Below are positions 3,203 through 47,540 of a stretch of 64,000 nucleotides of DNA, one piece after another (position 1 is the first letter of the stretch; each line of letters starts with the position of its first letter). The notes under the pieces are model-generated. The model searched no databases. It had not been told where the DNA came from and worked only from the letters and a program-made list of their open reading frames with translations. Where the stretch lies: contig OZ004607.1 of NCBI GenBank assembly GCA_963924565.1, positions 29,388,001 to 29,452,000 of the forward strand, read 5' to 3'. A program made the translations under genes and the position numbers. The stretch comes from Ascidiella aspersa. Taxonomy: Eukaryota.

Positions 3203-6200
3203 ATGATGCAAGGAATATCGCGAATCGCAGCCCACGAAATGTCGCACGACTACTTCATCGAGACTTACGGCAGCTGCTCTCCGTCACCAACCCACAAAGG
3301 TAAGTCAGAAATACCATTTTCAATGAATAGATATTGTAAATAGTCAGGTTTTTGGCGAACATAAATGTTATTTCCTTGTAGTATACAGGCAACATGTATT
3401 GAATGGATTCGTAATCTAAACCCAACACTTTAAAACAGCAATAATGAAAATAATACATTTAACAATAGAAGCGTTTTAAAAAAGTACTGTTTTGATGTGA
3501 ATATTTAATTGTAATATTCTAAAACCGTAGCATAGCTCACCCATATGTTTCAGTCAATTTATCCTGATTGAAAAAATAAATCAGTTTTAAAATTACCCTG
3601 CGCTAATAATAAAACTGTGTCCCAAAGGGTTTCGGGGATTTATCATTTTATTGACACTCGTCCGCGTCTGGCGAATCGCAATAACCAAGCACGCCGTTTC
3701 GAGTTATTGCCTTTCGTCTGCGATTCGCATAATTGCGCCACAAAAGTTACCCCATAAAAGGTGTTATTTCCCCATTTCGCTTGCGCCAGAGGCCTGTGAT
3801 CGATTGCATTTCCAGGCATAGCCTGTGCCACATCACGTATTCCCACCACGCGCATAGCCCTTGCCCCCTTACGCAGCAAACGGGCGGACGTCCAACTTTG
3901 TGCGAGCGGCTTGCCAATTAATTGCGTGCGCTTTTTGCTACTGGTTTGTAAATATTGGCCGCCCGCTTCATTAAGACTTTATTGTTTAGCGCCGGCGACG
4001 CTGATGCCGCTCGCCCCGGCCGCGGACTTATCGAACGAAGAGAGATTTTTGGACGACGAAAGAGCAAGCTCCGACGTGGAGGTATGTTTATGCTACGTTA
4101 ATTTGTATTTTATTAAGAGGTGCTGGGCTGACCTTTAGCCGATGTTTATAGTAAGCGGTAAAATATGTGATATAGGAGGTTAAAAAAGGGATAACTATAA
4201 ACAACGGCTAAAAGTTTAAAGTGACATCGGCTAAAAGTTCAAAGTGAAATTTACAAAAACATTTCTTCTCCTTGTTTTAGAAACGTATTGAAAAGTTGGT
4301 TAAGGCTGCAATGTAAACTGCTGCTTAGTTATGTAAAGGCTTAACGCTATTTTAAAATCGTGTTGCTATTTCAGTGCAACCGCGACGATTTTATCGCTGC
4401 CAGCGACGGATGTTTACAAGTTTACGCGTCTGAGGTTTAGGGAAAGCGATGGGTCCCGATTAAAACTCAGGCTGTGTGTTGGCGGATTTGGTCCGCATTC
4501 TTCGACCGCCGCTGGCCTTTGCTGCTGATAATAAAGGCCTTTCTTCGGCGTAACGCGGCAGTTCTCTTTTCCTGGAAAGCCGCTTAAAATCGGCCTTCTG
4601 GCGAGAGTTCAACGACACCGGATTTTCTCTGGCAACTTACCCGGTATTGCAAATCGCCGAGAGATTAGCAGGCCTCGCGGGAGTGTCGCGCATTAGCCTT
4701 GTAACATTCCTTAACCGCGGGTAACGTTAGCCAGATCACGCTAGCTTGTCGATGTGCTCGGCAGCTGTCAGCTGAACCTGTCGTTGTTGCAGCCCTGGCG
4801 CATGTGTTTTGCTGTTAGGGCGCTCGCCAAATAAGGGTCACCTCGTGTGACGTAGAAGCCCAGCGAAGGTGGCCTCTACTACGTCATCAGAGAGATGTAG
4901 ACAGGCAGACTACACGACTGACAGTTGTACGAAGTAGGCTTCGGCAAATATTGGATTAGGCCCCGGAGATATGTTACAGCTCGTCTCCATATCCTGTCCG
5001 TTAGCGTAAACAAGCGAATTAACTCGCGGCGGTAATTGCGCTTTTAAATTGCCCTTCACCTCAAGCCGCGTCAGTCTTAGAGTTGTGGGTAAGCCGCCCA
5101 GTGTATTGGCAACGCGAGCAAAGAGCCGTAGAAACGGGTTTGACCGGGGATCGTTTACTTAGCGACCCATTACCGATTCTGCACGGCCCACTACCTGGAA
5201 AGAAAGGAACGTGAAATTGTGGCCAATTAGGAGGCCGCGTAAACAAAGCACAGGCAGTGGCAAACTTTGCGTTGGCTGATCAGCCTGTAACTACGATCGT
5301 GGGCTCAGTACAAACGTATTGGTTCGAAGAAAGCAAACAAGGAATACTAGCAGCAGCCTAAAAGCTTGGGCAGGTATAAAAGACAGGGCTTTATTGTTTG
5401 CAAACAGTTGTCCAGTACAAGTCAGTTCATGTCTTCGCTTATCAGCATAAGAAAACTGTTGATCGCTATGGTTTAATAACAACGGTATCGGTTGGAAAAC
5501 TGTTGCTTTCTAAATGTTCACGATTCATAGCAGCAGCGCATATGCATCAGCGTTACGCAGCGGTATCGACAAGTGTTTGTTAACAAGGCGTCCAATGACA
5601 TCCGCGCGGATTAGAACGGCGTCGCCTTAACCAAAACAAACCGCGCACTGGAAAAGCGATCGGTCACCGCGCGCTCCTATACGATAGCAAACGGTGAGAT
5701 GCGATTTCGAAGGTGTATATTCTCGGAAGGCCGTCGTCGAGCTTACACGTAGTAGCAGGGGCAATCGAGGCGACGTGAAGTACGACTTGTGTGAACGGCC
5801 AATGTCCGCATTTTCGCTCTCGTTGACGTGTTTACGGTCTTGAATGTCACGTCGTATTGGTTGAAACCTCTCGAATCGCGCCCCACGCACCTGACTCTGT
5901 CCATTCACAGTTGTACGTAAACAGCCGGCGATCTTGGCCACGTATATGGGATCAGATTAACCGAGTGCAACACGGAAAAGTAAATCTCTTTAAAACCGTG
6001 ACCCCCAGATCGCTGATTCCGCAGCCCAGCGCTCGAATGTCTCCACGAATGAGCCATTTATTCGAAATCTCTCGAGCCTTTAAAATATGACAGAACGCTT
6101 CCGTTTTAAGGCGAAATGGGCTGGGATGGCATGGGCTGGGAGGGCGACCTACCGACACAGACAACGTTAGAGTTACAGCTATGAAGGGGGATTGTAGGTT

Positions 6201-9200
6201 TTCCTACGTAACTTACTCATATTTTGCCAGGTTTTCTTTTTAGGTTTCCTTTTTTCTGAGCTTTATCTTATCCGTTAGCTAGTGTAAGGGGTCGCTCTAA
6301 ATAGCTAAGCGTTTTAAGAGTCGTATTTTTTTCTAGTCGCGAAAATGTGATGAAAACAGAAGGGATGGGTCGTTTTTCAATGGCGGGGTTTCAAATTAGG
6401 ACTGTTTTGAATAACAGCCTACCCTGTGTTGTGCCGTATGGTAAATATTTTCAATAGGTTGAATAGTTTACACGTAAATGCTCACGTAAACCCCGAAAGG
6501 TTCCTCGCGCTTAATCGTTTCAATTTCCCTTGGGTTTAATTTTAACCCGGGTCGTGATAAAGGACGTTAGTGTTTTTGAGCCACATCCTACAGCGGCGAT
6601 GTCCTGTTTTGACCGACTCTAATTTTTCAAGCTTCAATGCTGGGTAATCCTGGAGTGCGAATTTCCCCGCGATGGGTTTTCACCCCTTGGTCAGTTTTTA
6701 GGTGACGCTGGTAAATAGCCTGGAGGCTCAAAATGGCGCAACGACAATTGCGAGTAGGGGTTAGGCACATGACAAATCTCGCGTGCGCTGGGGCGTGAAG
6801 TATGACTTCCCCTTTTGGCTTTTCCGATTTAAACAGTGGTTTAACAAGTCTATTGCGCTTTTGTGGATCGTTGCCAATCGAAGTCACAAATCACGAGTTT
6901 GGCGTCTGTGATACGAGTCTTCTCCCACCGACATGTCACGTCATGATTTCGCCTTAGCCGAGCAGTGACAGCTGTGCGATATTTCTAACGTCACGTTGTA
7001 GGTGGAATTGGAAAGTATGACGTCATTTTCCAAGAAACAATAAAAGTATTTAAATTTATTTGTTTGACACAGTTTTGAGAGCTATAAATAATACTGTGCA
7101 GCCAGTTTGCGATAATGTGGGTTTTTTCGTATTCATCAACGCATAAAGAACAAACAGGGTGTTTTATGCTTCACCAAAATGTTTCGTGTATTTCAAAGCC
7201 AAAGACACTCGCCCTTGACTGGTTACGCCTAACCAAAGCGTGTTCCAAGCTGACTGGATTGTTGGAGGCCGCGGTCGTTCTTGGGCCTACGCACCAGCAG
7301 CACCTGTCGCGCTGTACTTGTTCGACGGGTATTTTGTACAGCACACGTCGTTCGGTTAGTTAAATTGCGGCCGACGCGGTTACAGCGTTCTGTTCACGGC
7401 CAGCGCATTTATTGCCCCCCGAAAGCGTCGTAAAGGCGCCTTGATTCCGCCGCGCCTGACCGGCTTGTGATGCTTGGAGCTGCTGCCAGTTCACGCCTCC
7501 GACGCGGCGCATTTTAAGTTCATGCGAAGCTGTATACACGTCAATCGCCCGACTCTAGAAGGTTCAAGGCTGTTTGTAGCAGTAGAATGAAAAGTAGACG
7601 TGGAATGAAAGTAGAAGGCCTTTTTGACACCGTTTTGAGTTATTCTAATTCATCCTGGCGAGGTGTCCGTTTGTAAGTGGCGTGTCAATTGTAGTTATTA
7701 GATTAACACAAAGTCGCTTTTTAATATAACATTCAACAGAATTGAACAAACCGTGGTAACATACCACACCTAATGTTTCTTAAGATAGCATCGCCGCTTT
7801 TGGTCATACGCTTTCCTTTATAAACTGTCGTGTATTTGTGTGTATTCCGACACTATTACGTAACGAACTCGAACGCAATCACCTTCTTACGGTATAAAAC
7901 CACCCACGTATATCATGAAGTAATCATTTAATTATGTTACTTTAAATGGAGCAAGGCGGTTGGCTTTCACTATTCGCTCTTGGGAGAAGCGCAAAGATAA
8001 ACAACAGCTCGGCCTTTCGCGACGCGTTACTAAATCGAGCGACTCTGAGCTTACTGTTTGGTCGTCAAACTAATTTCGAGCCGGTCGTTTTTACAGCGGC
8101 GCCCCTTTAAAATCTGGGTCGGGTCGCCCTTGAGAGAAACAAGTACGATGCGAAAGAAACAAACAGCTGTATATTCACCGTAGAGTAAGGTTGCAATTTA
8201 GGCTGTGTACAGTTCAACGTCTTTGTAGTTCTAGTCTTGGTTGTTGGCCTATAGGCTTATAACGCCGTAGTCGCTGTTTCAGTTGTTTTGAAACGAGTTT
8301 AACATTTGGTAGAAAACAGTAGACAGTAGGGTCACCAACCATCCCCGAGTTCGTGGTAATTTGCCAAAACGACTGCAGGCTGTGGCGATCATTACGCCGA
8401 TTGCATGTCACGATTAGTGTCTAACATTTCGCCCTTGCCAATTGGCAAACCCTGGTTGCATCCAAGTTGCCTAAGACAGTCAAAGTCCAAGCTATAGCGC
8501 GCAAAATTTTCTTTGCTTGGCGCCTACAATGAGCTTTCGGAATTAGCTGGGATTACAACTTGAAATTCTCCGTTTGTCTTGGCCACTTACGGTCCCCTAC
8601 TTAGTAGCGCGGGTCAAAGTGTGAATGGGCGACGTGCTGGACGCGACCCTGGCCGAACCGCGCTTGTTTTCGTTACGCAAAGCGACAGGGGAAGCGAAAT
8701 TGATGGCCCTGCGACCTGCAAGGCAATGGCCGCTTAGGAGACGTTTGCAAAAGGCCCAATCAGTGCGTCGTGATTCATCGTTGCCGCAAAGGGCAGATTA
8801 ATAGCCCGTATCGCCAGTTATTGCCTTTGCTCGCTTGTTTACGGCCTCTGACGAGTTCGCTAGTGCATATAGCTATCAGGTGCAGCGGCAATTAATTGGC
8901 AGCAATGCAGATTTGATTTGTGGAGTATTGGACCTGCTCGATGGACGCTAATGCCTTTTGTCTTTTTGTGCAGAAAGTAACCAGTAGGAGAAATAGATAC
9001 AGCAAGAAGATGAAGCATCACGCCACCAGGGAACCACTAAGAGCCACCAGACCACACGGTAAGTGGCAGAGCGTCGTTTTGCGACTATAAAATTGATATT
9101 AACCCGGGGTAAATCGGCGATCTCCGCTCGTTACAACACATGATTAAACTTGATAGCCTAATATTGGACACGTGCGTGAACTATATATGATAAAACGCTT

Positions 9201-12200
9201 GCGGCTTGGAGATTTGCCGAAAGTGAAATAAGTTCTTACTCATTGATGACGATGCGCGGTAATTCGCAATAACCTAACAGCCTCAATCAATACGCCATTT
9301 ACAAGATATCGTAAACGTATTTCCTCCACCCTAACCACTTTTACCTTCCTCCACTTGCAGGCTCCCAGTACCTAAGCATGAGCCAGGAGGACATTCTCTC
9401 CAGCGTCGAGGCGAGTCCCGGACCTACCTCATCCGCATCCTCATCATCTTCTACGTCATCAAGGAGGACCACCAAGTTCCAGAATATCGCCAACCGACTG
9501 GCGCGTCGCAGCTTCCGAGTCGTCCCGAAAAAGAAGACAGTTGAAGGACCGTCCCACTCCGAACCCCTCAGCACGCGACCCCCCACTCCCAACCGCCTGG
9601 GGGCGTTTCTATTCAAACGCAGCAAGAGCGTGTCCCGTCAGCCACCTGCCGAATGCACTAGGTAAGCTTACCGGGTTAAAGGTCGTTTTTCTTATAAATA
9701 AATGTAACTGTTGGGTACTAGTTACTATAAGGAGATACAAGTTTCATGGTCGTGCGGTTTTTGCGAGCCAACTTTTTAATGTTTGAAATGTCTTTCAACA
9801 GAGCCAGTTAATTTAGAATTAACGTTTGACAAATAAAACCCTCATTTAGGATTTAAAAGATATACAGCTATCATCATAGCCTTGTATCGGTCAACATTTT
9901 AGGAGGGGAATAACGCATGGTCTGCCTTATGGCTCTAATAATGAGCGTGTTTCAAATCCTACGCATCGCCCGTATATATGCTACGACTGCTACGTGCTGT
10001 ACGCTGCATGCAAATGGCGGCATGACGAAGACATTTGTGCAGCTATTGGAGAGTTTCTGGAAACTCGGAATTAGCTTTAATTATGCAATTGACTCAAGCA
10101 CGCGCGGTAAAATCCCAAATCGTGGTGACCGCGCTCGCTAATGGCTTTGAGTATCCGCTTTTTCTACCAATAAATCGCCAAAACAACAGTCGATTAGGAG
10201 CACAGCTGCTGTGCCGTCGGCAAACCAAGATTTTCGCGTATGGTCATAATTGCAACTTCGCAGCCTAATGGCTAAGGCTAAACTTGAGCGCCTTAATTGC
10301 CAACGTCGATCGTGAGAGCAGGCGAAATTACGTGACGTATGTTGGGAAACCACAAGGTAGCCTGGGCCTATGTTATACATGATTGCACCTGCGTTAAGGG
10401 CCATTAAACTGACGCTGTAGGTGCCTTCCTCCGTTGGGTTTGTTCGGGTTTGTAAGCAACACACGCTAGATCCATTCCAGGGGTGAATGATACGTAGCAT
10501 ACAAGCTACCATATTTACTTTCATTGAAATTGCAACGCTGGTTATCCGCAAGCTTCAGTGTATTGTCAACCGTTCTAACAGGGAAGCTTTATTTTTCAGC
10601 TTCCGAATACTTTCCGACGACGAACAGCTTTCTTCCGTCCGCCCCGTCGCCTCAACCCCGTCCAGACCCCAGTCACGTGCCGACCGCAGGTCAAGGGTCA
10701 CGCGCAGCATGAGCATGTCGCCGTCGACGTCACTCCTCGTCAAGCCGGTAAGGGTGGGGTGACTTTCTCGTGTCTGCCTGTAGTTTGTGACAGATCGAAA
10801 TACTTCGATTATAGTTACGTTAGCAGTTTGCCTCGGACGCTTAATTTAAAGTACAATAAAACTGCCTCGAAGTTCAAACACGAGACAAAAACGGGGTAAT
10901 TTCGCCGCAGCAGTGACAACGCAGTAGTGATTTCGCTAATGTCCATCGTGACGTGATATAACAAAAATTCAAATTTTTAAGGCGAAAAGCTAATATCGCA
11001 ATTAAATTAATTCAGTTGACCTTAAGGAAATCGTTTTGATATGGCCTTTATACTCCAGTAAAACAGTTTACTATACGATTTTAAAAGCGCCAGGAATCAT
11101 TGATTTCAAAGAAACTTCTATGTATTTTGCACCCTGGGTGCGTTTACCATGTCCGTAGTGTACGTGCCGTTTTCGCGTTGAGACTTTTAGGCTTAAGTGA
11201 ACAAAATCGAATTTTGATCCTAACCTACGGGTCAGAGAGTAAAGCTAAAAGTGTTAACTCGCCAGGATCGATCGTATTTGGCCACAAGCGACGCTTTATT
11301 TTACGCGCTAACCGTGTGCGAAGTGCGCGTTTCGGTGGACGAGATAGACCATAGTTTTCGACGGGCACAATGGCCCAGTCTACATTCAAAGTCGCCCAAC
11401 TGAAACGGCGTTCCTCTTCGCAGAAGAATTTACAGCCGTCCAAGCGTCACAGCGCCTACGCGCCCAACGACTGGGAGACACTGTCTGACGGCAAACAGCA
11501 GCAGAAGGACACAATTTGCGACGGGGCCGAGATGGTCCAGGGCCAGGGTGGCAAGGAGGACATCTTGCAACAGATCCTGGAACAAAAACAGCAGATCTTG
11601 GACGAGCAGCGGCGCTTTCGCGACGAGGTGACTGTTTGACTTTGCCCGTCCTTGTACAAACACGCTAAAGTTCGCGCCGCAGAGGCATTTTCTAGCTGGT
11701 GTTTATCCACAACTTGTAGATCGCAGTGACGCGGCATAACCGGGATGCCGGAGGGTTACGGCCGTTTCCGGGCCTCTAAAAGGCCTTAGCCCTTCACGGT
11801 GTCTTTTCCTATGTTTACTTTCGCCAAGGCATGTTTGGAAAATCGCGAATTTTATAACGGCGTGGCATTTGTCCGAGCAAACAAGTTGCCTTTACGAATC
11901 CATTTGTTGGCCTTGTTTTCTCCCGAGCATTTTGTGGTTTGCCATGTTTTTGTATTAACCCTGGAGCTTTCGCAGGTCAACCCGTCTCGGGTCCGACAAG
12001 GCGACTCGGGCAGCGAACTCGATGTGACAAGAAAATACGAGTCGATACGCCAGAACGAGGAAACGCGAGTCGTGGCAATCGTCGCCCTTCTCAACAGGTA
12101 AAAACATAACGGATATATATTTACCAACGTTTTGTCAATCGCCGGCTCCTTTATTTTTTTTCGGTGGTACAAACGTATTTTTACCAAGTACAGCAACATG

Positions 12201-16576: not shown

Positions 16577-16825
16577 TCTTTATGCATTTGTTAGTTTTGT
16601 TTTTGTTCTTTCTTCGTTCGTCTTCCCTGCTGATTTTTCCACGTCTGCCAGTCTCTTCCAGTTCAAACGCAGTGTAAACAATCGAAATTACACATCCGCC
16701 GGCCATGCTTGCCAGACCCTATTTCTTTAGACGTCCTCATTTTTCTCTTTCGTTTTTTTTGTGCCAAAAGCCATCACAAGTGCCTCGCGACCGCCCCCTG
16801 TCGACCGAATGCAGTATTCCGAACA

Positions 16826-16831
16826 AATAAA
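16826..16831 (+). terminator. Putative poly(A) signal of gene A
   Basis: AATAAA ~250 nt after the stop, followed by a GT-rich tract; an alternative AATAAA lies at 17014. Confidence 0.45.
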
Positions 16832-37500: not shown

Positions 37501-40500
37501 TTGTTACTTTTGTTACTGTATTTAATTTAAATTTTGCTATCTGCATAATAAATGGGTGCTGGTTTCCAACTTAATCAATGCTATTTTCCCATTTCTTATT
37601 TAAATACTCGGAACCTTCCTTTATGCTCTTTTCAAACTTCGCATAATTGCGACTAGTTAAATTTCGGAGCGGAATGCTCTTTCCTGTGACTGACCATTGG
37701 TTTCCTTCAAACTGAAACCCGCCCTAATGCGTGCACTTAAACTTACAGACATGAGGTCAGCTGTGTATAAGCTAAAGGGCCGTCTCCAAGTTCCCTCCCC
37801 CGATCACCACCAGCAAGCGGAAGGACCAAGCTCAACGTGAGTCACGCCTTTCGATCGTAAAGTGCCTGCTCGATCAATAATTAATCGCCCCACAACGACG
37901 TTCAACCGCAGGTCGAGCATCGACGCACCGCATCCGGCGAACGAGCCGCTTCGCAAGGCTTCGGAAAGTTTCGGAAACCGCTTTCTGCACCGGGCGAAAA
38001 GCATGATAGGCAAGCAGCATAAGTCGGAAGAGCGGACCTCGTCCAAATCGCTGGCCACTTCTCCCAACGCCCGTGCCAATTCGTTGAGCGAGGACTGCCT
38101 GGACCTTACTCAGTACAGGACCGTCGATAAGGTCGAAATCACTCGGTGAGTGAAATTGCCTTGGTTTTATTTTGAATCATTTGTCAAGGTGACCGCATTG
38201 GCTTTGCGGTCGGATGCTACAGGAAACGGATTTCGAGCGGAAAACAGGGTTTTGCGGTTTTGGGCCGAGGTATTTTTGTTGAAGTTGTAGTAAATTCTTT
38301 TGAAGCCCTTTGCCAAGTTTTGAGGGCTTGCCTTACATATTTTGCAGCTGCAAAACGACAATTTGACCTAGTTCGTCGTTTGTATTTTAAAAGCTCTATT
38401 TTATATTTAACAACTTTGTTTAACATTGTTCATACTTTTTACGAAATATAATTTTTATTCGATTTATTCATGTTTCTTTCGAATGATGTACTATACTTTT
38501 ACTTTGGTACACTAGCAGCAGTATGCATAACACAGGCTAAAATAGCATTACATGGAAATGGTGATAGTTGCGTTAGAGTCAGATAACGCACTATAAGTAT
38601 CTCGTCGTGCGTTCCACTGAAATTCAACATATACCCGTAGCTGTACCGTATAGAACAAAACAAACAAACTACTATACATACAGTATCAACGACCCAAAAG
38701 AAAACTGCCAAGAAGAGAGGATAGCCAGCCTCGGTCCCATCCACCTGGAAGGAGCACTTTTCAGGAGGAAGAGGCTCAAATGGAGCAGGACTTGGGCGGT
38801 CCTCCACACCAGCAAGATGATGGCCTTCTACAAGGATGCGAACCATCGAGATCGCGAAGTTCCTTTGTTTCTCATCGATCTGAAACTCGGCTGCGATATT
38901 GGCCACGTGACGCAAGGTATATTTTTACATTAAACGCGCAAATTTGTTGGAACACAATCTATAGAATTTTTGGTGTACGAAAGGTTTGTCGTGGTAAGCC
39001 TGCAAGTTGAATATATACTGGCCAAAGGAACTTGTTTGTCACTTTATGTTTGTTTTTTTCAATTCAAAGTTGAGTCCTCTTTTAAGTTTTCGGTTACAGT
39101 CACTAAAGTATTTCTAAGATATATCGACTTGCGTGCGATATCGGGAACGTGACTCAAGGTAATTTTTTGGCGTTGAACACGTAAATTTGTTGGAACACAA
39201 TCTAGGGATTTTTGTGTACGAATTATATATTAACCTTGTAACAATTATTTCCATAACGGTTTGTCGTCGTTAACTTACAAGTTGAATATACTGACCAAAG
39301 ACATTTGTTTGTCACTTTATGAATAATTTGAAAAAATTCAAAGTTGAGTTCTAGTTTTTTTGTTTAATGTGACAGATTGTTGATAAAAAACAAACTATTT
39401 TTGTTTAAGATTTTAAAGAAAAACGATATTTTGTTGTCTAGAGAGTATTGCATTAATTTGTGTGTCAAACTTAGTTTTCTGGTTTAACATATTCATTAGG
39501 CAAGTTATTAGAAAAATTAAATTTGTGATAATGTTATCTTCAAATTTAAAACAACAGCATTAAAAAGCTCTTCAGCCTATATATCAAAAAATAAATAACG
39601 GGAGAAGATTAAGTAACATATGTTTTTTATCACCCAATTTAACACGCATGCCAAACCGATTAATCATATTAACCTTGATTATGTGGGGTATTGATTTGAT
39701 TTTAAGCTTTTTCGATTTTAGACAAAGCTGGCAGCTCGTTCACGCTAACTTCCAACTCTAATCCAAAAGAAGGTGGAAAGATGGGATCTTCGCTGGAACA
39801 AAACGACAAGGGTATTTACTTTACTTATTGTTTAAAGATAAATTTAATATTAAAAAAACAATTTAGTTATAACAAAAATGTATGTGGGCTCATGGAGCAG
39901 TCGTATAACAGATCACAAATAGAATTAATCCCATTTTAAAAAGTTTAAATTATGCAAATAGTGAATTGCGTACGAAGCCCCAATCGTCACGGCCCGTATA
40001 TACTTTAGATTCAATAAAATTTCGCAGCGCCTCATCATTCCAACTCGGCGGCGTATGTGGCCAAACAGAATTATCTGCGCCCGCCTCGGCAAACCTCTAA
40101 TCCGACGCATCTCTTACTTTTCTATCCAAAATCAACTTCGGAGCGAGCGAACGAATTTCGCGGTTCGAATATGCGCTCGAGCCATATCACGTCGCGCTCA
40201 CGCCAGCCTGACAGCGGCAGGCCTTTGGCTGGCTCCAGAGCGCAAGTCGCAGTTGTAGGGCTGATGTCGAGTCGTCGGGATTAGAGAGCGAGTTCGCGGC
40301 GTGCGTCCGAATCGCTAATCCCCTTATCTGCTTGTTTACTGGATCGTCGCCGCTGGCCTGGCGAAAGCTGGACGCTGTGGCGACTGGCTGCTTACGCCGC
40401 ATTCTGCTACTAGGTCGATCAAATTTGCTCGCCATGCGCATTCGCGGACGCTTGATTGGGGTTTGTTTTGGCGGTTTGCCTACGTCGAACCTTTGTTGGC

Positions 40501-43500
40501 CGACGGGATTATTGCCTTGTAATTGCCAGCGCCGCGCAAATCGACAAGCGAATGCTGATTGATGGACAGAGGCGAAGGCCCAAAACGACGTCACAAAAAC
40601 TAAATCGAGTAACATCTGATGTACGCAATTTCTGGTTGTTAAGCCCGGTCAGACATTGTATGGTCATCACATTTTACACTCTGGATTACGTAACACGATT
40701 GGGCTGATCCTTCGGCTCGCAAATTTAGTACATTAAGCTATGCGTTCTTTAAATCCGTTCATTCAAATCCAAAAATGCCTCTTTCTAACATAATTGTTTT
40801 AGTTAAAAATGCCGAAATATTTTGGACATTTCAGGAATCCGAATAAAACTCGAAAATATAAAAACACAACAAATTTAGTTTAACCGGTAAAGGAGAACTC
40901 CAACTATAGATTGCAATTAGAAAGCAACTGTTTCCCACGTGCTGTTAAGCAGACGTTGGCGGTTAGCTATTGCAACGGTGCCAGCAGTCGATCTTACAAT
41001 ACACGCTTTGTCCGTTTGGCACAATCCTTAAACCCAAACAAGCGAATCGCGTTGCATAACTTTGTGTAAACCTTAAACGCGTGTTCCTTTCGCGCAGGTG
41101 CCGAGAGCAGAACGCGCAGGTCGGTGCAGCTTCTGTGCAAAAGCGTACCCGAGTTCGTATACTGGATCAAGGCGTTCGTTTTGGTTAACACGTCAGCGCA
41201 ACTGCCGACCAAGGTATCGTCTTCCCCGACGCCGCTTAACGAATCGCTCATATCCAAACAAGGTCAAACGGGAATAAACTTCGAGAGCTCGTCGCGGTTC
41301 GACGTTCCAGGAATCGCCTCTTCGTCTGCTGCTGGTGCAGGGAGTACATACGCGCCTGGAGTGGACGTCTTGGAAGATTTCCCCACACTCCGGTGCGCTG
41401 TAACTCCACCAGCCTTATCAGGGTTAGACCCGAGTACTCTAGACACGAGCATAACTGTGCAGACGCCCTTGTTCAAGCTGGACCGCAACGCCAACCACCC
41501 TCGTGATGATCACATTAACATAATAGTGGGAGATAGTGTTTTCGATTCTTCGACTGCTTTAACCGATTTGCGAACGGACATTCATGGGAAAACATTAGAG
41601 CCGGCTGATGGCGTGAAAAGATACTTCAGGGCGGAAACGAGCCGCGAAAAGGTTATTGCAAGGGACCTGCTCGCGGATGTGTCAGGCTCGGATGACAATG
41701 GGCGCCGAGAACAAACGGGCAGCAGTTCAAACATCCGAGGTGCTTCACAGCCAGGTTCCCGCAGCACAAGAGAGGAACAATGCCAAGTTCGCGGCATCAA
41801 AGCCTCGAACCTGCAGGTCGGCATGAGCGGAGCGTGTCAGGTCGACGCTGGCGAGGTGCGAAGCGATCGAGCCGCTAATCGCCGGTGTAATAATGACGCC
41901 CAGTCGCCAGGGCCGCGCGCCCTTATCGCCGGCGAAAGCGATTGCGGCGCTGCGCAAACAGAAGCGACCCGCGGGCGTTCGAGCGCGGACGAGAGAGAGT
42001 TGCCGCCCGCGCTGCCTTTTTCCTCTCGCGCTCTCGTTCATAAGGATCCAGAATGCCGAGACTCCATCACAACAGCTCAAACAGCAGTGCCATCAGCAGC
42101 TGCAGCGCTTGAATTACCAAGGATTATTAATCGTCAGGCAGTCATTAATAGGTCGTTACTAGTTAACGCACCAGTAGAAAGTTTGTGGAATATTAATCCG
42201 AGTTTGGAGCAACCTATTTACCCCGAAGTTTTTGAATTCGCAGCGACCGATAGTTTACCTTATTCTAACAACGACCAGTTGATTTGCAAACCCAAGTCAA
42301 GCTTCCGAAGACGACGACAGTCTGACGGAAATATCTTGGAAGCCTGTTGCGACAAACCTTACAGAATGAGATTTTCGCGAAGACCCGTTCCTGAACTCAC
42401 AAAAATCGACTTCATTGAGATCTACGGAGGATACAACGGCAATAAAGGTATGAAACCGCGAATTTATTAGCCTATAATATAAAGGTAATACAAAAGTTAC
42501 GTAACGTCTGCAATTTTCTTAATGTGGTAGAGTGATGTTAACGGTGATATTAAATAACCATTTTTGTTGTTGGTATATGTTGTATGAATTTGTGTGTTGT
42601 GTCTATGCAGATGCCTGCACAGACTCAGAAGTTCACACACACCTTAACATCAACATGAAATTCCTCGCGGTAAGTCGAATTTATTTGAAAGTTATTTTGT
42701 TCGGAGTCGTGTTTACAGTAACCTGGGAAATTTGGTCGTCACAAGTGTTCATCTTTATTTTCGCCCAAAATAGTTTCAACGCCCACGTTGTTTTTAAAGC
42801 ATCATTAAGTTTCCAGCGTGGAACCTCGAAGTCACGCGATTAGGATTCCAACCGAAAGTGTGGGAGTTGTTTTAATTGGCCGCCGCTAATCGCGCGCGGA
42901 TTACGCCGAAAGCGCTGTTTTTATCGCCACCGCGATTATCGCGTCTCTTGTTTTCGAGCGATAACAATCCCGTATGAATTTGTGTGAGCGCCCATAACAA
43001 TTTGGACTTAGTAGCCCTGATGGAAAACAGGGTCATAAATCGCCGCTGAAGTTTATTACGCGCGGTCGTGTTAAATGCACTCTGTTCAACTGGTTAAAAA
43101 TATACCCCAAATTGCTTTGGAATACCCTTTCCTAAAATTACATCGAGCGGTTATCTTTCCCAATAATATCTGAGAGTATGGCTGTGTACACTACAAGACG
43201 ACACGCATGCCCGAGGAAATGCGATTACACGGCTTCATTTGCATATCGCTTTGCTGTCAGTTCTGTTCCATGCCCCTGGATCGGTTTACACCCGTCCCGG
43301 GCCAATCCCTTTGCGGCAAGCCATCTAAAATGCTTGTCCGTGTGTCTGTCACCCAACGCTCTCTCGACGCGATTGCGTGTCAGTGTGCATACGTGTTGGC
43401 CTGCAGTTGTTGATTGTTTTCGTCTTGTGTTGCAGCAAAAGCGCCGAAGCGTTCACAAGGAATCTGAAAATCGATCTATGTCATCAGAAGGTAAGTTTTG

Positions 43501-46500
43501 TTTCACAAATAAAAATATAAAATATATATATCAAGATTGCTATTAAAATTTATTTTGTATGCTGCCTGATTCATGGTAAAAGTAAATATAATCGTTACCA
43601 ATTGCATTGGTTGTTGCTATTTAAGTAGTAAACCGAAGTAAAAAAAAACAATTTGAGAACGCTTTTATTCTTATTTGTCTGGAATAGCTTTCAAATATTT
43701 TGTAATTACCACTAAAACATGTTTTTTTTGTTTAGAATCCAGCTCTTCGGGCGTATCGTCGTCCGGAATTGGCTCCACCGACCAGCACAAAACCAACCTG
43801 GAAAGAAGTCACTCGCACCTCAGCTCGGCGTCGGCCTCCAGCGACGGATCCACCAAGGTGGGGTCGCGCTCGGGACGCTTCAGCCATATTGCGGCCGCGC
43901 TGCGCTTTGGCTCCAGGGGTGGCGACCAGACTGGCGCCAGCAGCGCCGGGAAGGCAACTGTGCTGCATCTGCCCGCCTCGCAGATGGCCAACGCCGCTCA
44001 CCGCGGTTACATGGACCGACGGGGCAAGAAGAAGCAGTGGGAAAGGTAATTTCGCCTTTTGTCTTTTGTCTCTATAGCAGTGCCACACTCAAAAGATGCA
44101 CAAATACTTTACAAAGGGTGAATGCCGCACTTAAGGCACCACTCGACGATCGTATATAGAGGGATATAGGCAGAATATTGTTGCGGTTGGCACTTGAGCC
44201 TTTGACGCACGCATTCCAAAGAACCACACCCGTAAACAAGAATTGTTTGAGAAGCTTGTTGAACTTTTTAGCCTATAGATAGCAATAGCTCCTCGCATAA
44301 CTTCCGTTTTTGTGAAAAAAATAGCTTGTTTAACTATTTCATGAAATATCCTTGAGCTATATTCGTAAATATCTTGGTAAATTTTAGTGGTTCGATTAGT
44401 ACAAATTTTTTTGCTAGCGTTCTCGAACCTTCTCTCTTGTCAACGAGAAAGTTGTTACCGATTGAACCGGTCGTCGAGTCGAGATTACTTACAGCGAAGA
44501 AAACAAAAATCGAAATCGCCCGCTATTGTTTTCGCGTTGGCCCGCGCCCCGAAGTGCACCCGGTGTTTTGGCATCGAGCGCCTTGGGCAATCGAAGCGAC
44601 ACCCGCCACTTAATGTGATTTGCCTTCGATCGAGTGTACGTGACGGAGTGCTCGAAACCCGATGCTCGAATAACATTGACCGACTAGCAAAGGCCGTTAT
44701 TGGCAATCCCGCGGCGGGATTTTTCCTGTGCGATTCGACCGCGTTCAGCTGCGCAAAGCAATCCAATAAGTAGCGCTCGGTGACCGCCGAAAGGTCGTTG
44801 GCGCACCCGTTTAACATTTCTTCTCTTTATTCAGGTTCTGGTGCGTTCTGCAGGACTCGTGCCTCTACTGTTACAACTCGCCGCAGTCGGCATCGACCCG
44901 CGACGTGATCCTGCTACGCGGCTATGACGTGATCGCCGACGTCATCAACGTGAACCGCAGCCGCTTCATGTTTCGTCTTGCTCAAGAGGTGAGACAGCCC
45001 TTCTTTGTGATACACCCCACAGTCCCCGCCGTCTGTAACAGTTACAATGCGAAGGAAACCCTTCGCTTCACGCACAATGCTAAGTCTCGAGACTTCGCAC
45101 GCCGCGTGTCGATTACAGAACAGAGCCTAGGATGTTCGTTAATAATCGGGCCACTTTAATTTTTATTGATACTTACATTGATTGGGAGACATTTGGATTC
45201 CAGACACGCTATGCAGGCGTGTGAGTGGCTCTCACGCCGCATATTGACTTCCCAACGCTCGCCTAAGCCCGCCCCTCTAACCGCAATCTCTTGTTTCAGG
45301 GCGCGCCAACACTTCACTTCAGCGCCGACAATCACCAAGACTACTTGCTGTGGGTCGGCACCCTGGAGCGCGACACCAGAAGCGTGAACAACCCAGGCAG
45401 CGGAGCCAGTCCGGATGGCAACAGGTAAAATTCGGAAGCCGACACGCGGAGGTGTAAACAAGCGTTTTGTTTCGACATTTTACATCTAATGTAATTTCGG
45501 TGTGGTCGGGAAATGCCAGACATTCTTTGCGACTCTGGCGTTTAAAATTTGCTAAGCGCGCCACATCAGCAATTAAGGACGGATGTTTTATATCTCAAAA
45601 CAAGCAGACCGTTAATCCATTAGCATATTTGAAACACTTTTACGCATAATAACCACTTAACCTGGTAGAAACCGACCTTTTAATTACAGCCTCAAACTCT
45701 AGGGCTTTAACATTTTATTGCTAGTGACCAGTGTTATGAAAGTATTAGAAATTTCAGGCCCATCGTATCAAATGATTTAATAGTAAAAAAATAAGCTTCA
45801 CAACATAAAATTATCATCGCGTGTATTCATAAATTAATTCAGAAACATGATCTATGCAAAATAAACGAAACATACTGACATCCTTCTTGTTCATTTGCAG
45901 AAAAGACACAACTACCAGCAGCAAGTACACCAACAGCCTCTCGCCGGCACACAGTGTGTCCGGAGGATCGCTGAGGAGCAGTGACTCGACCGAGGACGCA
46001 AGCAGGAGCAACCTTGGCTCTTCCCTGAATCACAGCGAGTCCTCCGAGCGCCTCGGTCAAGATCTCGTTGAGATGGAGAAGCACAAGCTCCTCAAGGAGA
46101 TCGTAAACCAGCAGCACCAGATCCTCCACGAGCAAAAGCAGTTGGCGAAAAAGGTGAATAATATAACCAATACATATAATACCTTGGGCGCTTCCTTTTT
46201 TATCATCAAGTATTTTATTTATAATTTAGAGCTATTGTTTTTAAAAGTTGAGTTAAGTTTATAGTTGCATTTTATTACCTTCCTGTTTGAATCTAAATGA
46301 CTGGAAAACAAAGTTTCATACCGCCGGAGCTCTAACATTTAATCATATATTCCACCACGATTTATCAACCACAATTTCGCCATTGTAACCCGCCTTTTTT
46401 CTTCTCAGATTTCCTGTGACTCCCCCTCATCGAGCCCAACTGCCTCGGCCGCGAGCCCGCTAGTTTCCCGCCGCAGCGGCAACAACAGCATTATCGCTTC

Positions 46501-47540
46501 GCCGCCGCCGCCCGCCATCCGTCGCGAGGTTGTACTGAACCGCTTCGAGCGCGTTCGCGATGCCGAGGACCTGAAGATGACCAAGTTCATGACGCACCTG
46601 ACGCGGCGACGTAACTCGGCGCAGCTCAAGGTCGACCAGCTGTCGCGAGAGATCGCACCGCGTACCGGGAAGCGTCGCAGCGCCGACCACCGCCGCTTCG
46701 CCGCCGTCGAGGCGAGATTGGGAGAGATGCGCGCTCGTTTGGCAGGAATCGATGAGGAGATTGCCGTTGGACAAGCTAAACAGCAGAACGTCATCAGCAA
46801 GCTGCGGGAGCGGCAAGACTTCGAGCTTCTGCTGGCTGAACAGCAGGAAACGCTCGCCATCATGCGACGTCACGAGCATGACGTCAGCACCGGTTTGGTC
46901 GTGCCGCCGGCGCGCCGCTTTCACCGTGCTTCCTCCGCCTCAGCAGTGGTCACCGGACGCAGGGAACCGCTCGCATCCATCGAAGACCTCTCGAGCATCT
47001 CGGACTGCTCCTCCTCAGGGTCGCTTGAGCTGTCCTCCGAGAGCAAGGGTGTGATCCGAACCATGTCCACCCCGCGACAGCAGAGGAGCGAACAAGGCGT
47101 CCGACAGTCTGTCGTCATTCCCTTGTCTTCCGACTCTATTGATTCCGCAACTGAGGAGTACAACCAAAGAGTGATCCGTCCTTCCGGTCTCTGCAGTCGT
47201 AGCTCCTCCAGCATTGAGGATCCCATCGCCTCCTCCTCTATGAGTTGCTCCGCCTCCTCACTCCCGGCTGCCCCCAGCCAATCCTCGGATGTTGATCCTG
47301 CTGTCATGGCTGAAATTGAGGTAGGCGTCCTCACTTGTTACTATAACTAGATCTAAGATAGAAAATAATTATGATTTTTGATCTACGCTAAGTAACTGAT
47401 CTTATTTTTAAATACACTGTATCTTGTTGATTAAACTTTCTATTTTCTAAACCGATTTCCTTTTTATTTAGATGTTCGAGCAATTCTCAGCGCTTACTTT
47501 GCAAAAGATTCAAAGCAGATCGCCGCAAAATTCTCTGTAG
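24315..47540 (+). CDS. Gene B: spliced ~1812-aa protein with three pleckstrin-homology (PH) domains, long Ser-rich linkers and a C-terminal coiled coil
   Basis: Exons: 24315-24377, 27377-27537, 28410-28788, 31002-31177, 32111-32409, 33727-33817, 34759-34874, 35588-35675, 36770-36903, 37749-37836, 37912-38145, 38684-38916, 39722-39811, 41098-42447, 42611-42669, 43436-43490, 43736-44045, 44835-44988, 45300-45424, 45901-46153, 46409-47320, 47472-47540 (TAG). The sum is 5439 nt and all phases are compatible. An in-frame TAG at 24279 lies upstream of ATG 24315. It could instead be two genes or isoforms joined at the 41098-42447 exon. Confidence 0.8.
26366..26726. mobile_element. hAT-type MITE (non-autonomous), gene B intron 1
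   Basis: TIRs CGGCGGTTCTCAACC / GGTTGAGAACCACTG; flanks GCTTAATG / GCGCAATG (6/8, decayed 8-bp TSD); repeated TGGGCCA subterminal motifs. Confidence 0.8.
30625..30962. mobile_element. hAT-type MITE, gene B intron 3
   Basis: TIRs CAGTGGATCTCAACC / GGTTAAAAATCACTG; perfect 8-bp TSD ATTTAGCA (30617-30624, 30963-30970). Confidence 0.85.
35187..35523. mobile_element. Degenerate hAT-type MITE, gene B intron
   Basis: Ends CAGGGGTTCCTATACT / AGTTTATAAACAACTG (11/16 inverted match); flanks GTGTCGGG / GTGTAGGA (6/8); GGGGTCCA- and GGTCCAC-type subterminal motifs. Confidence 0.65.
38684..41190 (+). other. PH domain 2 of gene B (spliced over 3 exons)
   Basis: LEGALFRRKRLKWSRTWAVLHTSKMMAFYKD...PLFLIDL...SFTLTS...VQLLCKSVPEFVYWIKAF. 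Confidence 0.8.
38931..39352 (+). repeat. Diverged direct duplication (~150-180 bp x2) in a gene B intron
   Basis: AAATTTGTTGGAACACAATCTA...GGTTTGTCGT...CAAGTTGAATATA...TTGTTTGTCACTTTATG...AATTCAAAGTTGAGT occurs at ~38931-39079 and ~39173-39352. Confidence 0.85.
43990..45375 (+). other. PH domain 3 of gene B (spliced over 3 exons)
   Basis: HRGYMDRRGKKKQWERFWCVLQDSCLYCYNS...ILLRGYDV...RFMFRLAQEGAPTLHFSADNHQDYLLWVGTLERD: canonical PH pattern with a basic beta1-beta2 loop. Confidence 0.9.

What the first reader, a model, noticed from the sequence alone, without database searches (positions are those of the whole stretch)
3203..47540. Tandem paralogue pair: gene A is a PH-less copy of the last ~670 codons of the triple-PH gene B
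Seen in sequence: collinear shared motifs. N-terminal ISRIAAHEMSHDYFIETYG (A) vs FSRRPVPELTKIDFIEIYG (B), ungapped. KFQNIANRL vs RFSHIAAAL. KEDILQQILEQKQQILDEQRR vs KHKLLKEIVNQQHQILHEQKQ, with an intron at the same place. RKYESIRQNEE...LNRRKNSLRIKCDRFEKEL vs NRFERVRDAED...LTRRRNSAQLKVDQLSREI. C-terminal DVDRRVLAQIE|DFEHF vs DVDPAVMAEIE|MFEQF, with an identical final intron position. The first five intron phases also match (1,0,1,2,0). Lengths are 678 aa (A) and 672 aa (B from ATG 42366). Inference: an old duplication produced a membrane-binding PH scaffold and a PH-less partner that kept the coiled coil and terminal motifs. A could therefore act as a heterodimeric regulator or decoy of B. I do not recognise the family.
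Basis: partly seen in the sequence, partly recalled or inferred. Interest (0 to 1): 0.75.

Follow-up and report, generated by a model that had tools for sequence, protein, structure and literature searches.

The report
PH-less paralogue in ascidian triple-PH family
Gene A is a real, conserved sea-squirt gene related to the tail half of its neighbour B, and it has kept that family's zipper and end motifs but lost the membrane-binding PH domain; this is an ordinary kind of gene-family evolution in a family nobody has studied.

Summary
15 of the 16 quoted peptide strings are at the stated places; the 16th spans an intron in A. The exon models give 678 and 672 codons, and both genes have intron phases 1,0,1,2,0.

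Direct A-versus-B tblastx finds nothing significant, because A's exons are short. Homology is nevertheless firm:
- A profile built only from B-type sequences retrieved A-type orthologues from 1.84 billion proteins, at E 8e-6 and 2e-5.
- hhalign of A-types against B/C-types gives probability 99.0, E 3e-18.
- BLASTP of Phallusia A against Phallusia B gives E 2e-11.
- A, B and a third paralogue share intron positions.

The interpretation needs correcting. This is a three-gene cluster, not a pair. A short, PH-bearing gene C lies about 87 kb past the window's end on the minus strand. C starts at the same methionine motif as A and scores closer to A than B does. In the tree, A is sister to B plus C.

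The family is unnamed. It occurs in tunicates, amphioxus, hemichordates, echinoderms and an annelid. Its only vertebrate lead is a resemblance of the tandem PH domains to AFAP1.

The decoy or heterodimer role is untested. RNA reads confirm only A's last intron.

The parts
3203..3299 (+). Gene A exon 1. ATG, then MMQGISRIAAHEMSHDYFIETYG.. (the family's S-x-D-x-F-x-E-x-Y-G motif). Donor gtaagt, phase 1.
   Evidence: Sequence read. tblastn of Phallusia A-type P0038 residues 1-30, 77% identity, E 1e-11. Non-A HMM positions 5-29, E 0.1.
3990..4081 (+). Gene A exon 2, a candidate only (phase 1 to 0).
Evidence: One of nine candidates tied for the best score among 297 AG..GT open candidates. No RNA or homology support.
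8974..9058 (+). Gene A exon 3 (phase 0 to 1), basic.
   Evidence: tblastn of P0038 residues 64-91 at 8974-9060, E 0.007. Splice sites read.
9361..9661 (+). Gene A exon 4. Ser-rich, then KFQNIANRLARRSFR, then ..LGAFLFKRSKSV.. at the place of PH strand beta1. Ends in phase 2 at the same intron as B4|B5 and C.
   Evidence: E 3e-19. Intron comparison. MAFFT placement.
10600..10747 (+). Gene A exon 5. It stands in the place of the PH-core exon (148 nt against 154 nt in B and C) but is Ser/Arg/Pro-rich, with no PH signal.
11424..11627 (+). Gene A exon 6, ending in the first helical block KEDILQQILEQKQQILDEQRRFRDE. Phase 0 donor at the same place as B7|B8.
   Evidence: Non-A HMM positions 245-306, E 0.0064.
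11976..12097 (+). Gene A exon 7, ..RKYESIRQNEETRVVAIVALLN. Phase 2 donor at LLN^R, shared with C and absent from B.
   Evidence: (E 0.36).
13658..13868 (+). Gene A exon 8. Holds the RKNSLRIKCDRFEKEL block (invariant R, S and K) and the strongest heptad segment.
   Evidence: (E 0.053); residues 34-70, 1 of 200 shuffles as high.
14491..14721 (+). Gene A exon 9. End of the helical region and the acidic/Ser block ..TLGSVDDTSVFEDS..
   Evidence: hhalign alignment.
15210..15348 (+). Gene A exon 10, Ser/Thr-rich. Donor gttggt, phase 1.
   Evidence: E 2e-6.
15848..16173 (+). Gene A exon 11. TSDCDSGFDNGDTLSRSDISLD block (92% identical to Phallusia over 50 residues) and DVDRRVLAQIE.
   Evidence: E 1e-21; E 0.044. 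Donor confirmed by RNA reads.
16496..16576 (+). Gene A exon 12, coding part: DFEHFAEKRIRCLSNKGRIVPLKGGS plus the stop codon.
   Evidence: Acceptor confirmed by 4 spliced RNA reads with 3 start places, joint 16173|16496, GT..AG.
27255..28788 (+). Gene B 5' coding part with PH1. Candidate ATG at 27255; exons about 27374-27538 and 28410-28788.
   Evidence: tblastn of Phallusia B-type P0005 residues 23-201, E 2e-12 and 2e-21. Sequence read. The ATG and the first short intron are guesses.
38709..38917 (+). Gene B exon with the first half of PH2.
   Evidence: Pfam PH, E 0.0059, below cutoff. tblastn of P0005 residues 597-667, E 2e-13. Donor read.
41098..42447 (+). Gene B 1350-nt exon. End of PH2, a long disordered stretch, then ..YRMRFSRRPVPELTKIDFIEIYG.. 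with the internal ATG at 42366, where the A- and C-type proteins begin.
   Evidence: The Met is present in 4 of 4 tunicate B-types.
42611..43490 (+). Gene B small exons B2 (42611-42669, phase 1 to 0) and B3 (43436-43490, phase 0 to 1).
43736..45424 (+). Gene B exons B4 (43736-44045), B5 (44835-44988) and B6 (45300-45424). They hold the RFSHIAAAL motif and PH3.
   Evidence: Pfam PH on B5, E 0.0036. Non-A HMM E 4e-12, 1e-29 and 5e-11.
45901..46153 (+). Gene B exon B7, ending in KHKLLKEIVNQQHQILHEQKQLAKK. Phase 0 donor.
   Evidence: E 1e-10.
46409..47320 (+). Gene B exon B8, 912 nt in one piece. Holds the NRFERVRDAED..LTRRRNSAQLKVDQL block, the heptad segments, LASIEDLSSISDC and DVDPAVMAEIE. It corresponds to A exons 7-11.
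   Evidence: (E 1e-58).
47472..47540 (+). Gene B last exon: MFEQFSALTLQKIQSRSPQNSL plus the stop codon.

Best explanation
Gene A (window 3203-16576, + strand, 12 exons, about 678 codons) is a functional, single-copy, PH-less member of a three-gene ascidian family. All three genes lie within about 160 kb of one chromosome.
- A.
- B: triple-PH, about 27255-47540.
- C: a short single-PH gene, about 87 kb past the window's end on the minus strand.

The family descends from an unnamed triple-PH/zipper protein found in amphioxus, hemichordates, echinoderms and an annelid.

Shown:
- A is homologous to the part of B and C that runs from the internal Met/S-F-x-E-x-Y-G motif to the C-terminus.
- A keeps the exon scaffold of the third PH domain. 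The phase-2 intron at the ..WE^R|FWCVL.. position is kept, and so is the phase-0 intron that follows it.
- The sequence on that scaffold is now Ser/Arg/Pro-rich, with no PH signal.
- One PH exon, the equivalent of B6, has no counterpart in A.
- A retains the first helical block, the KYE..LLNRR.NS.(L/I)K.D block with its invariant Arg, Ser and Lys, a heptad segment of about 40 residues, the acidic L.S(I/V)(D/E)..S block, the SD.DSGF block and the C-terminal ..IE.FE.F motif.

Inferred:
- A works as a soluble adaptor. It still dimerises through the heptad segment and binds whatever the conserved blocks bind, but it no longer reads membrane lipids through a PH domain.
- Pairing with C or B is possible (about 0.3). 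Self-pairing with its own conserved blocks (TSDCDSGFDNGDTLSRSDISLD.., ..KGK(L/I)(V/I)PLK tail) is at least as likely.
- The duplication is old. A-types exist in Phallusia and Clavelina, and by name in Ciona. A keeps introns that B has lost in its 912-nt exon.

The confidence of 0.7 is for the whole statement. The shown part alone I put at about 0.95, and the soluble-adaptor mechanism at about 0.6.
For: Homology:
- A profile of the B8 exon plus two B-type fragments, with no A-type sequence in it, found A-types P0038 (Phallusia, 617 aa) at E 8.2e-6 and P0041 (Clavelina, 585 aa) at E 2.4e-5 in a library of 1.84 billion proteins (sequences; names).
- hhalign of A-types against B/C-types: probability 99.0, E 3e-18, 187 columns, 29% identity.
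- BLASTP of P0038 against P0005 (both Phallusia): 54.7 bits, E 2e-11.
- The window's own A exons are hit collinearly by a non-A HMM.
- The exon-chain score exceeds 200 of 200 shuffles.

Gene structure: the intron phases and positions are shared by A, B and C.

PH loss. hhalign gave no second hit over the PH region.

Retained modules:
- R320, S323, K327, I590 and F593 (P0038 numbering) are invariant in all 15 aligned proteins.
- The heptad segment is at the homologous place in A8, B8, P0038, P0041, P0007, P0003 and P0026.

A real gene:
- P0038 maps collinearly on 11 of my 12 exons at 40-92% identity.
- It is single-copy in its own genome: all 10 matches lie in gene A.
- 4 spliced RNA reads cross the last intron, and the DNA run X1 has 0 such joints.

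Third paralogue. C exons were read.
Against: - Direct tblastx of A against B is not significant.
- Single A exons reach only E 0.006-0.4 against the non-A profile, so the case rests on collinearity and on orthologue profiles.
- RNA support is thin. Only 8 reads were laid from about 6% of one run. Reads covered 1 of the 7 junctions inside the laid stretch, and none of the junctions upstream.
- Exon A2 is a guess.
- The heptad test is my own crude score, not a validated coiled-coil predictor.
- No structure could be predicted.
- No interaction, localisation or lipid-binding data exist.
- A's long branch (1.79 changes per column) makes its place in the tree unsafe. Both alternative placements are rejected only weakly (p-AU 0.029 and 0.028).
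Confidence: 0.7

Rival explanations
1. A is a truncated tandem copy of B itself, and it acts as a heterodimeric regulator or decoy of B through the shared coiled coil.
For: - A and B are adjacent on the same strand.
- They share the intron after the first helical block, which C lacks.
- The heptad segment is conserved at the same place.
- The zipper region is the best-aligned part.
Against: - A-types score higher to C-types (52-81 bits) than to B-types (44-60 bits).
- A shares the LLN^R and KL|HN introns with C, not with B.
- A and C both start at the Met motif, which is internal in B.
- The tree puts A outside B plus C (95/96), and an A+B clade has p-AU 0.028.
- Identity in the zipper region is only 25-29%.
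- A has conserved blocks of its own.
- No interaction test was possible.
Confidence: 0.2
2. A is a decaying copy, either a pseudogene or a string of chance open frames, and the exon model is an artefact.
For: - Very low read count in the one RNA run (8 reads).
- The PH domain is lost.
- The branch is long.
- Exon A2 is unsupported.
Against: - Eleven exons are matched collinearly by the Phallusia protein, up to 92% identity over 50 residues.
- A-types of Phallusia and Clavelina share many invariant blocks.
- All modelled introns have GT..AG ends and consistent phases.
- Spliced reads cross the last intron.
Confidence: 0.03
3. The resemblance is compositional, from coiled-coil and Ser-rich bias plus chance motifs, and not common descent.
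For: tblastx finds nothing significant. Much of both proteins is Ser-rich or helical.
Against: - Composition-preserving shuffles never reach the observed chain score (0 of 200).
- hhalign E 3e-18.
- Whole-library E about 1e-5 from a profile without A-types.
- Identical intron positions and phases inside aligned motifs.
Confidence: 0.01

Closest known systems
Unnamed triple-PH/zipper proteins of non-vertebrate animals: Ciona intestinalis LOC100176971 (B-type), LOC100187201 (C-type) and Phallusia 'LOC100176973'-like (A-type); Branchiostoma LOC118431098; Saccoglossus LOC102800563; Patiria LOC119745386; an Owenia PH domain-containing protein
   Same: Same family by sequence. They share the S-F-x-E-x-Y-G motif, PH3 (except in A-types), the KYE..RR.(N/M)S.Q.K block, the heptad segment and the C-terminal ..EIE.FE.. 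motif.
   Different: A-types lack all PH domains. Only tunicates show the split into long (B) and short (A, C) genes among the sequences I saw. None of these proteins has a described function in the names given by the sources.
AFAP family (actin filament-associated protein 1). Architecture recalled: two PH domains around a Ser/Thr-rich stretch, with a C-terminal leucine zipper and actin-binding part.
   Same: A reptile AFAP1 (P0075) was the only protein outside this family at E<=0.001 in the word search with the non-tunicate profile, E 8.2e-10. hhalign aligns PH2-linker-PH3 of the family with PH1-linker-PH2 of AFAP1 at probability 97.3, E 2.5e-11, over 283 columns. The overall order, tandem PH then a long linker then a short zipper near the C-terminus, is alike.
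   Different: The zipper and C-terminal motifs do not match: domain scores are -7.1 and -9.3 bits. AFAP1 has two PH domains, not three. A itself has none, so A cannot be filed under AFAP. The candidate list was capped at 8000 word-sharing proteins, so other vertebrate PH proteins may not have been scored.
CNK / connector enhancer of KSR 2. This is the name a source gives the Phallusia C-type P0007.
   Same: A PH domain followed by a helical C-terminal part (recalled for CNK and IPCEF1).
   Different: Pfam finds only PH in P0007. There is no SAM or PDZ, which I recall as defining CNK. The name looks like an automatic best-hit label.
PLEKHA6 PH domain (PDB 2d9y, 2yry)
   Same: The only solved structures matched by the B/C profile, E 5e-4 and 8e-4, over PH3.
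   Different: The match is weak and covers the PH alone. No WW domains are found.
Dimerisation-only paralogues such as Id proteins among bHLH factors (recalled analogy, not a relative)
   Same: A paralogue that keeps the pairing helix but lacks the targeting domain. That is how A would work if it pairs with B or C.
   Different: Unrelated fold and process. Pairing by A is not shown.

Membership tests
Unnamed triple-PH/zipper family (LOC100176971-like), as defined by the alignments made here | S-x-(D/E)-x-F-x-E-x-(Y/F)-G motif ahead of the last PH domain | tested here: met
   A exon 1 has ..SHDYFIETYG. F18 is nearly invariant among 15 proteins. Non-A HMM positions 5-29, E 0.1.
Unnamed triple-PH/zipper family (LOC100176971-like) | PH domain(s); the last one lies directly before the helical part | tested here: not met
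   No PH in 10 A stretches at E<=1, nor in P0038 or P0041 at E<=0.1. B-types and two outgroups have 3 PH stretches; C-types have 1. Only the exon scaffold and a beta1-like ..GAFLFKRSKS.. remain.
Unnamed triple-PH/zipper family (LOC100176971-like) | Helical core: LL.E(I/V)..Q...I.EEQ, then KYE....EE......(L/I)(L/T).L(N/K)RR.(N/M)S.Q(L/I)K.D | tested here: met
   hhalign probability 99.0, E 3e-18. R320, S323 and K327 invariant in 15 of 15. A6, A7 and A8 hit at E 0.0064, 0.36 and 0.053.
Unnamed triple-PH/zipper family (LOC100176971-like) | Heptad (zipper-like) segment of about 40 residues after the RR.NS block | tested here: met
   My own heptad score: A8 residues 34-70 (1 of 200 shuffles as high). 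The same place scores in B8, P0038, P0041, P0007, P0003 and P0026. This is not a validated predictor.
Unnamed triple-PH/zipper family (LOC100176971-like) | C-terminal ..(E/D)(I/V)D...(L/M)A.IE.FE.F.. | tested here: met
   DVDRRVLAQIE|DFEHF in A. I590 and F593 invariant; E591 and E594 nearly invariant.
Unnamed triple-PH/zipper family (LOC100176971-like) | Shared intron positions and phases | tested here: met
   A and B: phases 1,0,1,2,0, plus the intron after the first helical block and the last intron. A and C: the WE^R, LLN^R and KL|HN positions.
AFAP family | Two PH domains around a Ser/Thr-rich stretch (recalled) | tested here: not met
   Not met for A, which has no PH. For the wider family the tandem PH does resemble AFAP1.
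AFAP family | C-terminal leucine zipper and actin-binding part homologous to AFAP1's (recalled) | tested here: inconclusive
   The non-A HMM against AFAP1 P0075 gives helical-part domains of -7.1 and -9.3 bits. Only one AFAP sequence was at hand.
CNK / CNKSR | SAM, CRIC and PDZ domains ahead of the PH (recalled) | tested here: not met
   Pfam on P0007, P0016, P0003 and P0005 finds PH families only, apart from weak sub-cutoff matches to unrelated families.
PLEKHA4-7 | WW domains plus one PH (recalled) | tested here: not met
   No WW. Only a weak PH match to PLEKHA6 structures.

The most novel reading that the evidence does not exclude
A is a naturally evolved 'zipper-only' antagonist or tuner of its PH-bearing paralogues C and B. 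It keeps the pairing helix and partner-binding blocks while its PH decayed in place, and it has been held under selection across ascidian orders. The whole unnamed family would then be the non-vertebrate counterpart of the AFAP adaptors, so ascidians would offer a three-gene system for studying how membrane targeting of such adaptors is regulated.
Probability: 0.15. Interest if true: 0.55.

Novelty: new member of a known kind. Interest (0 to 1): 0.35.

Why it matters
It gives a clean, checkable case of a domain lost in place: the introns of the PH domain are still there while the fold-forming sequence is gone.

It also ties together three 'uncharacterized' ascidian loci and their amphioxus, hemichordate, echinoderm and annelid relatives as one family with defined motifs. 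These are an invariant RR.(N/M)S site, a short zipper and a C-terminal IE.FE.F motif.

This helps annotation. It also provides a testable lead, the AFAP-like tandem PH, for what the family does.

The event type itself, partial duplication followed by domain loss, is common.

Tried and rejected
Approaches that led nowhere:
- tblastx of the A region against the B region gave nothing significant. I replaced it with exon-chain and profile tests.
- Pfam on single exons gave only sub-threshold PH hits for B and nothing for A.
- A PDB sequence search with exon B8 returned only reovirus sigma-1 coiled coils at E>0.1. I rejected these as compositional.
- A word search with the A-type alignment returned only P0038 itself, not even P0041.
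- A regex search for the C gene's first exon (the Met..F.E.YG motif) in L008 found nothing. The 5' end of C in this genome is not located.
- The search of earlier findings by words found nothing.

Readings considered and rejected:
- CNK membership: no SAM or PDZ.
- PLEKHA membership: no WW, and only a weak PH match.
- AFAP homology of the zipper: not detectable with one AFAP sequence.

Literature: I made four full-text searches.
- AFAP + Ciona.
- AFAP1/AFAP1L1/XB130 + evolution/invertebrate.
- The three Ciona LOC numbers (0 papers).
- 'three PH domains'/coiled-coil/ascidian.
None gave a paper on this family. I saw search listings and the starts of abstracts only and read no paper. Supplementary files were not asked for; gene lists in supplements of ascidian expression papers could mention these loci.

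Full report
WHAT IS THERE

The window is from an ascidian. It lies at C1:29388001-29452000 of a 308.6-Mb assembly.

Two spliced + strand genes fill the finding. I read their exons from the sequence.

Gene A:
- It has 12 exons: 3203-3299, 3990-4081 (candidate only), 8974-9058, 9361-9661, 10600-10747, 11424-11627, 11976-12097, 13658-13868, 14491-14721, 15210-15348, 15848-16173 and 16496-16573, followed by the stop codon.

Gene B:
- It runs from about 27255 to 47540. The Phallusia mammillata B-type protein P0005 maps collinearly from 27380 to 47323.
- From the internal ATG at 42366 the nine coding pieces sum to 2016 nt, or 672 codons.
- B-type orthologues have three PH stretches by Pfam.
- B's last 672 codons include the third PH domain (exons 43736-44045, 44835-44988 and 45300-45424).

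CHECK OF THE OBSERVATION

15 of the 16 quoted peptides are found as written. The 16th is split by an intron in A.

The first five intron phases are 1,0,1,2,0 in both genes. The intron after the KEDIL/KHKLL block and the last intron (..IE|xFExF) are at identical positions and in phase 0 in both.

Direct tblastx between the two regions is not significant; the best hit is E 0.093, on the antisense frames. A's exons are short and identity is about 25-29%, so I tested homology in four other ways without joining exons.

1. A collinear chain of exon-by-exon local alignment scores reaches 386. Residue shuffles give 298 +/- 19 and permuted exon order gives 321 +/- 20. In each case 0 of 200 reach the observed value.

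2. A profile built only from exon B8 and two B-type fragments (alignment A1) was run against 1.84 billion representative proteins.
   - It found 46 proteins at E<=0.001.
   - Two of them are A-type proteins: P0038 of Phallusia (617 aa, E 8.2e-6) and P0041 of Clavelina (585 aa, E 2.4e-5).
   - Their N-termini (MMQGLSRIVTNEMSHDQFVETFG..) match A exon 1.

3. hhalign of the two A-types against seven B/C-types gives probability 99.0, E 3e-18, over 187 columns. BLASTP of Phallusia A against Phallusia B gives E 2e-11.

4. An HMM built from 13 B-type, C-type and outgroup sequences, with no A-type, was run on all 2149 stop-free stretches of the window in six frames.
   - It hits seven stretches of gene A, all on the + strand, at E 0.0064 to 7.8.
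   - Six of the seven are in the same order as the profile.
   - Only one stretch outside A and B is hit, at E 3.8.

The paralogy is real.

IS A A LIVING GENE?

Evidence that it is:
- P0038 maps collinearly on 11 of the 12 exons at 40-92% identity.
- The two A-type orthologues share long invariant blocks.
- A is single-copy in its genome: all 10 matches lie in gene A.

RNA evidence is thin. One RNA-seq run of the same species label (X4) was laid on 10590-16589.
- Only 8 reads were laid from about 6% of the run.
- Four of them, with 3 start places, skip 16174-16495 with GT..AG ends. That is exactly my exon 11/12 junction.
- The DNA run X1 shows no such joint.
- The other six junctions in the stretch had no reads, so they are neither confirmed nor contradicted.
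- Exon A2 rests only on frame, phase and splice sites.

I recall, but did not check, that the Phallusia records are transcript-derived.

The big search also returned short single-PH proteins of 668-761 aa:
- Phallusia P0007, which a source calls 'CNKSR2-like'.
- Clavelina P0008.
- Ciona P0006.
- Styela P0016.

Three of the four start MR..(L)S.(D/E).F.E(T/S)(F/Y)(G/C), as A does. The Ciona model starts later.

The window's genome has such a gene (C) at C1:29539371-29549341 on the minus strand, about 87 kb beyond the window's end.

I read C's exons.
- C shares with A and B the phase-2 intron at ..WE^R|FWCVL.. and the phase-0 intron at the end of that exon.
- C shares with A only the phase-2 intron at ..LLN^RR.NS.. 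and the phase-0 intron at ..KL|HN.. (A: ..MQ|LS..).
- C lacks the intron after the first helical block, which A and B share.
- B has one 912-nt exon where A has five exons.

The simplest reading (an inference) is that the ancestor had all these introns, that B lost several and C lost one, and that A kept the fullest set.

Other evidence on A's position:
- BLASTP scores of A-types are higher to C-types (52-81 bits) than to B-types (44-60 bits).
- The maximum-likelihood tree has 15 rows and 621 columns. The tunicate clade is supported at 100/99. A sits on a very long branch (1.79) as sister to B plus C (95/96).
- Forcing A+C or A+B costs 9.6 log-likelihood units each, with p-AU 0.029 and 0.028.
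- With such a long branch I do not treat this as decisive.

In sum, A is an old short-form paralogue. That it is a copy of B in particular is not shown.

The Met at which A and C begin is present at the same place inside all 4 of 4 tunicate B-types. This fits a partial duplication starting there, or a short B isoform as the source. That is the subject of another note, s1-802168, which I did not test further.

THE PH DOMAIN

A has no PH signal, and hhalign gave no hit over that region. Yet the scaffold remains:
- Exon A4 ends, at the same phase-2 intron, with ..LGAFLFKRSKSVSRQPPAECT, where B has ..HRGYMDRRGKKKQWE. MAFFT places the A-type ..GAF(L)FKRSKS.. under ..RGYLDRRNKK... This is suggestive, not statistical.
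- Exon A5 (148 nt) stands where the PH-core exon of B and C (154 nt) stands, with the same flanking phases, but it encodes Ser/Arg/Pro-rich sequence.
- There is no counterpart of B6, the last third of the PH.

This agrees with the scan's other note, s1-802373 ('PH decayed in place').

WHAT A KEEPS

Across 15 aligned proteins from A, B, C and outgroups, R320, S323, K327, I590 and F593 (P0038 numbering) are invariant. F18, L317, D329, E591 and E594 are nearly so. These lie in three places: the S-F-x-E-x-Y-G motif, the ..LNRR.NS.(L/I)K.D.. block and the C-terminal ..IE.FE.F.

RR.(N/M)S fits what I recall as a basophilic-kinase site. This was not tested.

My own heptad score finds its strongest segment at the homologous place in A8, B8, P0038, P0041, P0007, P0003 and P0026. 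It is a short zipper of roughly 40 residues.

A also keeps the acidic L.S(V/I)(D/E)..S block and the SD.DSGF block, which C-types and some outgroups have and which the window's B has largely lost.

HOW IT MOST LIKELY WORKS (INFERENCE)

The parent proteins look like membrane-associated scaffolds: PH domains, a dimerising zipper and conserved peptide motifs. A keeps the zipper and the motifs but not the lipid reader. It should therefore be a soluble adaptor that can still pair and bind the family's partners.

Whether it pairs with B or C, as a tuner or decoy, or only with itself is open. No structure or multimer prediction was possible.

COMPARISON WITH WHAT IS KNOWN

I looked up names for 20 of the 46 hits.
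- 18 carry an organism name. Ten are ascidian. Eight are from Branchiostoma, the hemichordates Saccoglossus, Ptychodera and Glandiceps, the echinoderms Patiria, Diadema and Holothuria, and the annelid Owenia.
- Two are unnamed (Logan, JGI).
- None is a vertebrate.
- 26 hits, mostly fragments of 67-391 aa, were not looked up.

A word search with a profile of seven non-tunicate members found one protein outside the family at E<=0.001, a lizard AFAP1 at E 8.2e-10.
- hhalign aligns the family's PH2-linker-PH3 with AFAP1's PH1-linker-PH2 at probability 97.3, E 2.5e-11.
- The zipper and C-terminus do not match.
- The only solved relatives are PLEKHA6 PH domains at E 5e-4.
- CNK membership fails for lack of SAM and PDZ.

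So the wider family works like, and may be related to, AFAP-type adaptors, but membership is not shown. A itself, having no PH, cannot be filed there.

Four literature searches found nothing on these loci (listings only).

VERDICT

It is incomplete in that this is a three-gene family and C is at least as close to A as B is. The proposed function is untested.

A-type genes are already annotated as uncharacterized loci in other ascidians. What is new is the family assignment and the in-place loss of the PH domain.

This is an ordinary evolutionary pattern in an unstudied family. Interest is modest, at 0.35.

The joined spliced proteins of A and B were deliberately never built or searched.

Noticed in passing
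Own genome G000:C1:29539371-29549341, minus strand (loci L007, L008), about 87 kb beyond the window's end: A third paralogue (C-type, single PH plus zipper), 51-90% identical per exon to Phallusia P0007. Its first exon was not found within L008.
   Followed up: partly
window 13658-13690 (A8) and 46601-46630 (B8); P0038 residues 319-327: In ..LNRR.(N/M)S.(L/I)K.. the Arg, Ser and Lys are invariant in all 15 aligned family members, including the A-types. It looks like a basophilic-kinase site (recalled consensus).
   Followed up: no
window 15880-15960 (A11); P0038 residues 503-513: An SD.DSGF block is conserved in A-types, C-types and some outgroups (Holothuria, Glandiceps, Styela B). It is degenerate in the window's B (..SSDSIDSATEEY..).
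   Followed up: no
window 42357-42371; P0003, P0004, P0005: All 4 of 4 tunicate B-types have ..(Y/N)(R)MR.. with a Met exactly where C-type and A-type proteins begin. Hemichordate and echinoderm relatives have ..(R/K/Q)MS(R/K).SF.. there. Older Styela models split B into 1035-aa and 671-aa proteins (P0049-P0052).
   Followed up: partly
window 46409-47320: B8 is one 912-nt exon where A has five exons and C at least three. A 304-aa Logan ORF (P0001, nearest to Styela B) reads through the same stretch and past its donor, so the fused exon seems old in the B lineage.
   Followed up: partly
P0030 (Branchiostoma isoform X2, 1025 aa): In the alignment this amphioxus isoform lacks the third PH domain altogether, and Pfam counts 2 PH stretches. 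This may be a PH3-less form produced by splicing or a faulty model.
   Followed up: no
P0012 (Styela clava LOC120326530, 675 aa): This gene model joins a P-loop (..GGAGTGKSH..) helicase-like N-terminus to a near-copy of the C-part of P0016. It is either a chimeric model or a captured duplicate.
   Followed up: no
window 12190-12389 and 15590-15789 (introns of A): The word depth of DNA run X1 jumps from about 48 to 141 and 424, with loose contig ends nearby. These are probably repeated elements inside A's introns.
   Followed up: no
window 27255-27373: The candidate first coding exon of B (MLVDPRRPLGRPQGFEVK) would be followed by an intron of only about 65 nt before ..QNYWCVIRDGG. The model is a guess from frames and the Phallusia protein.
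   Followed up: partly
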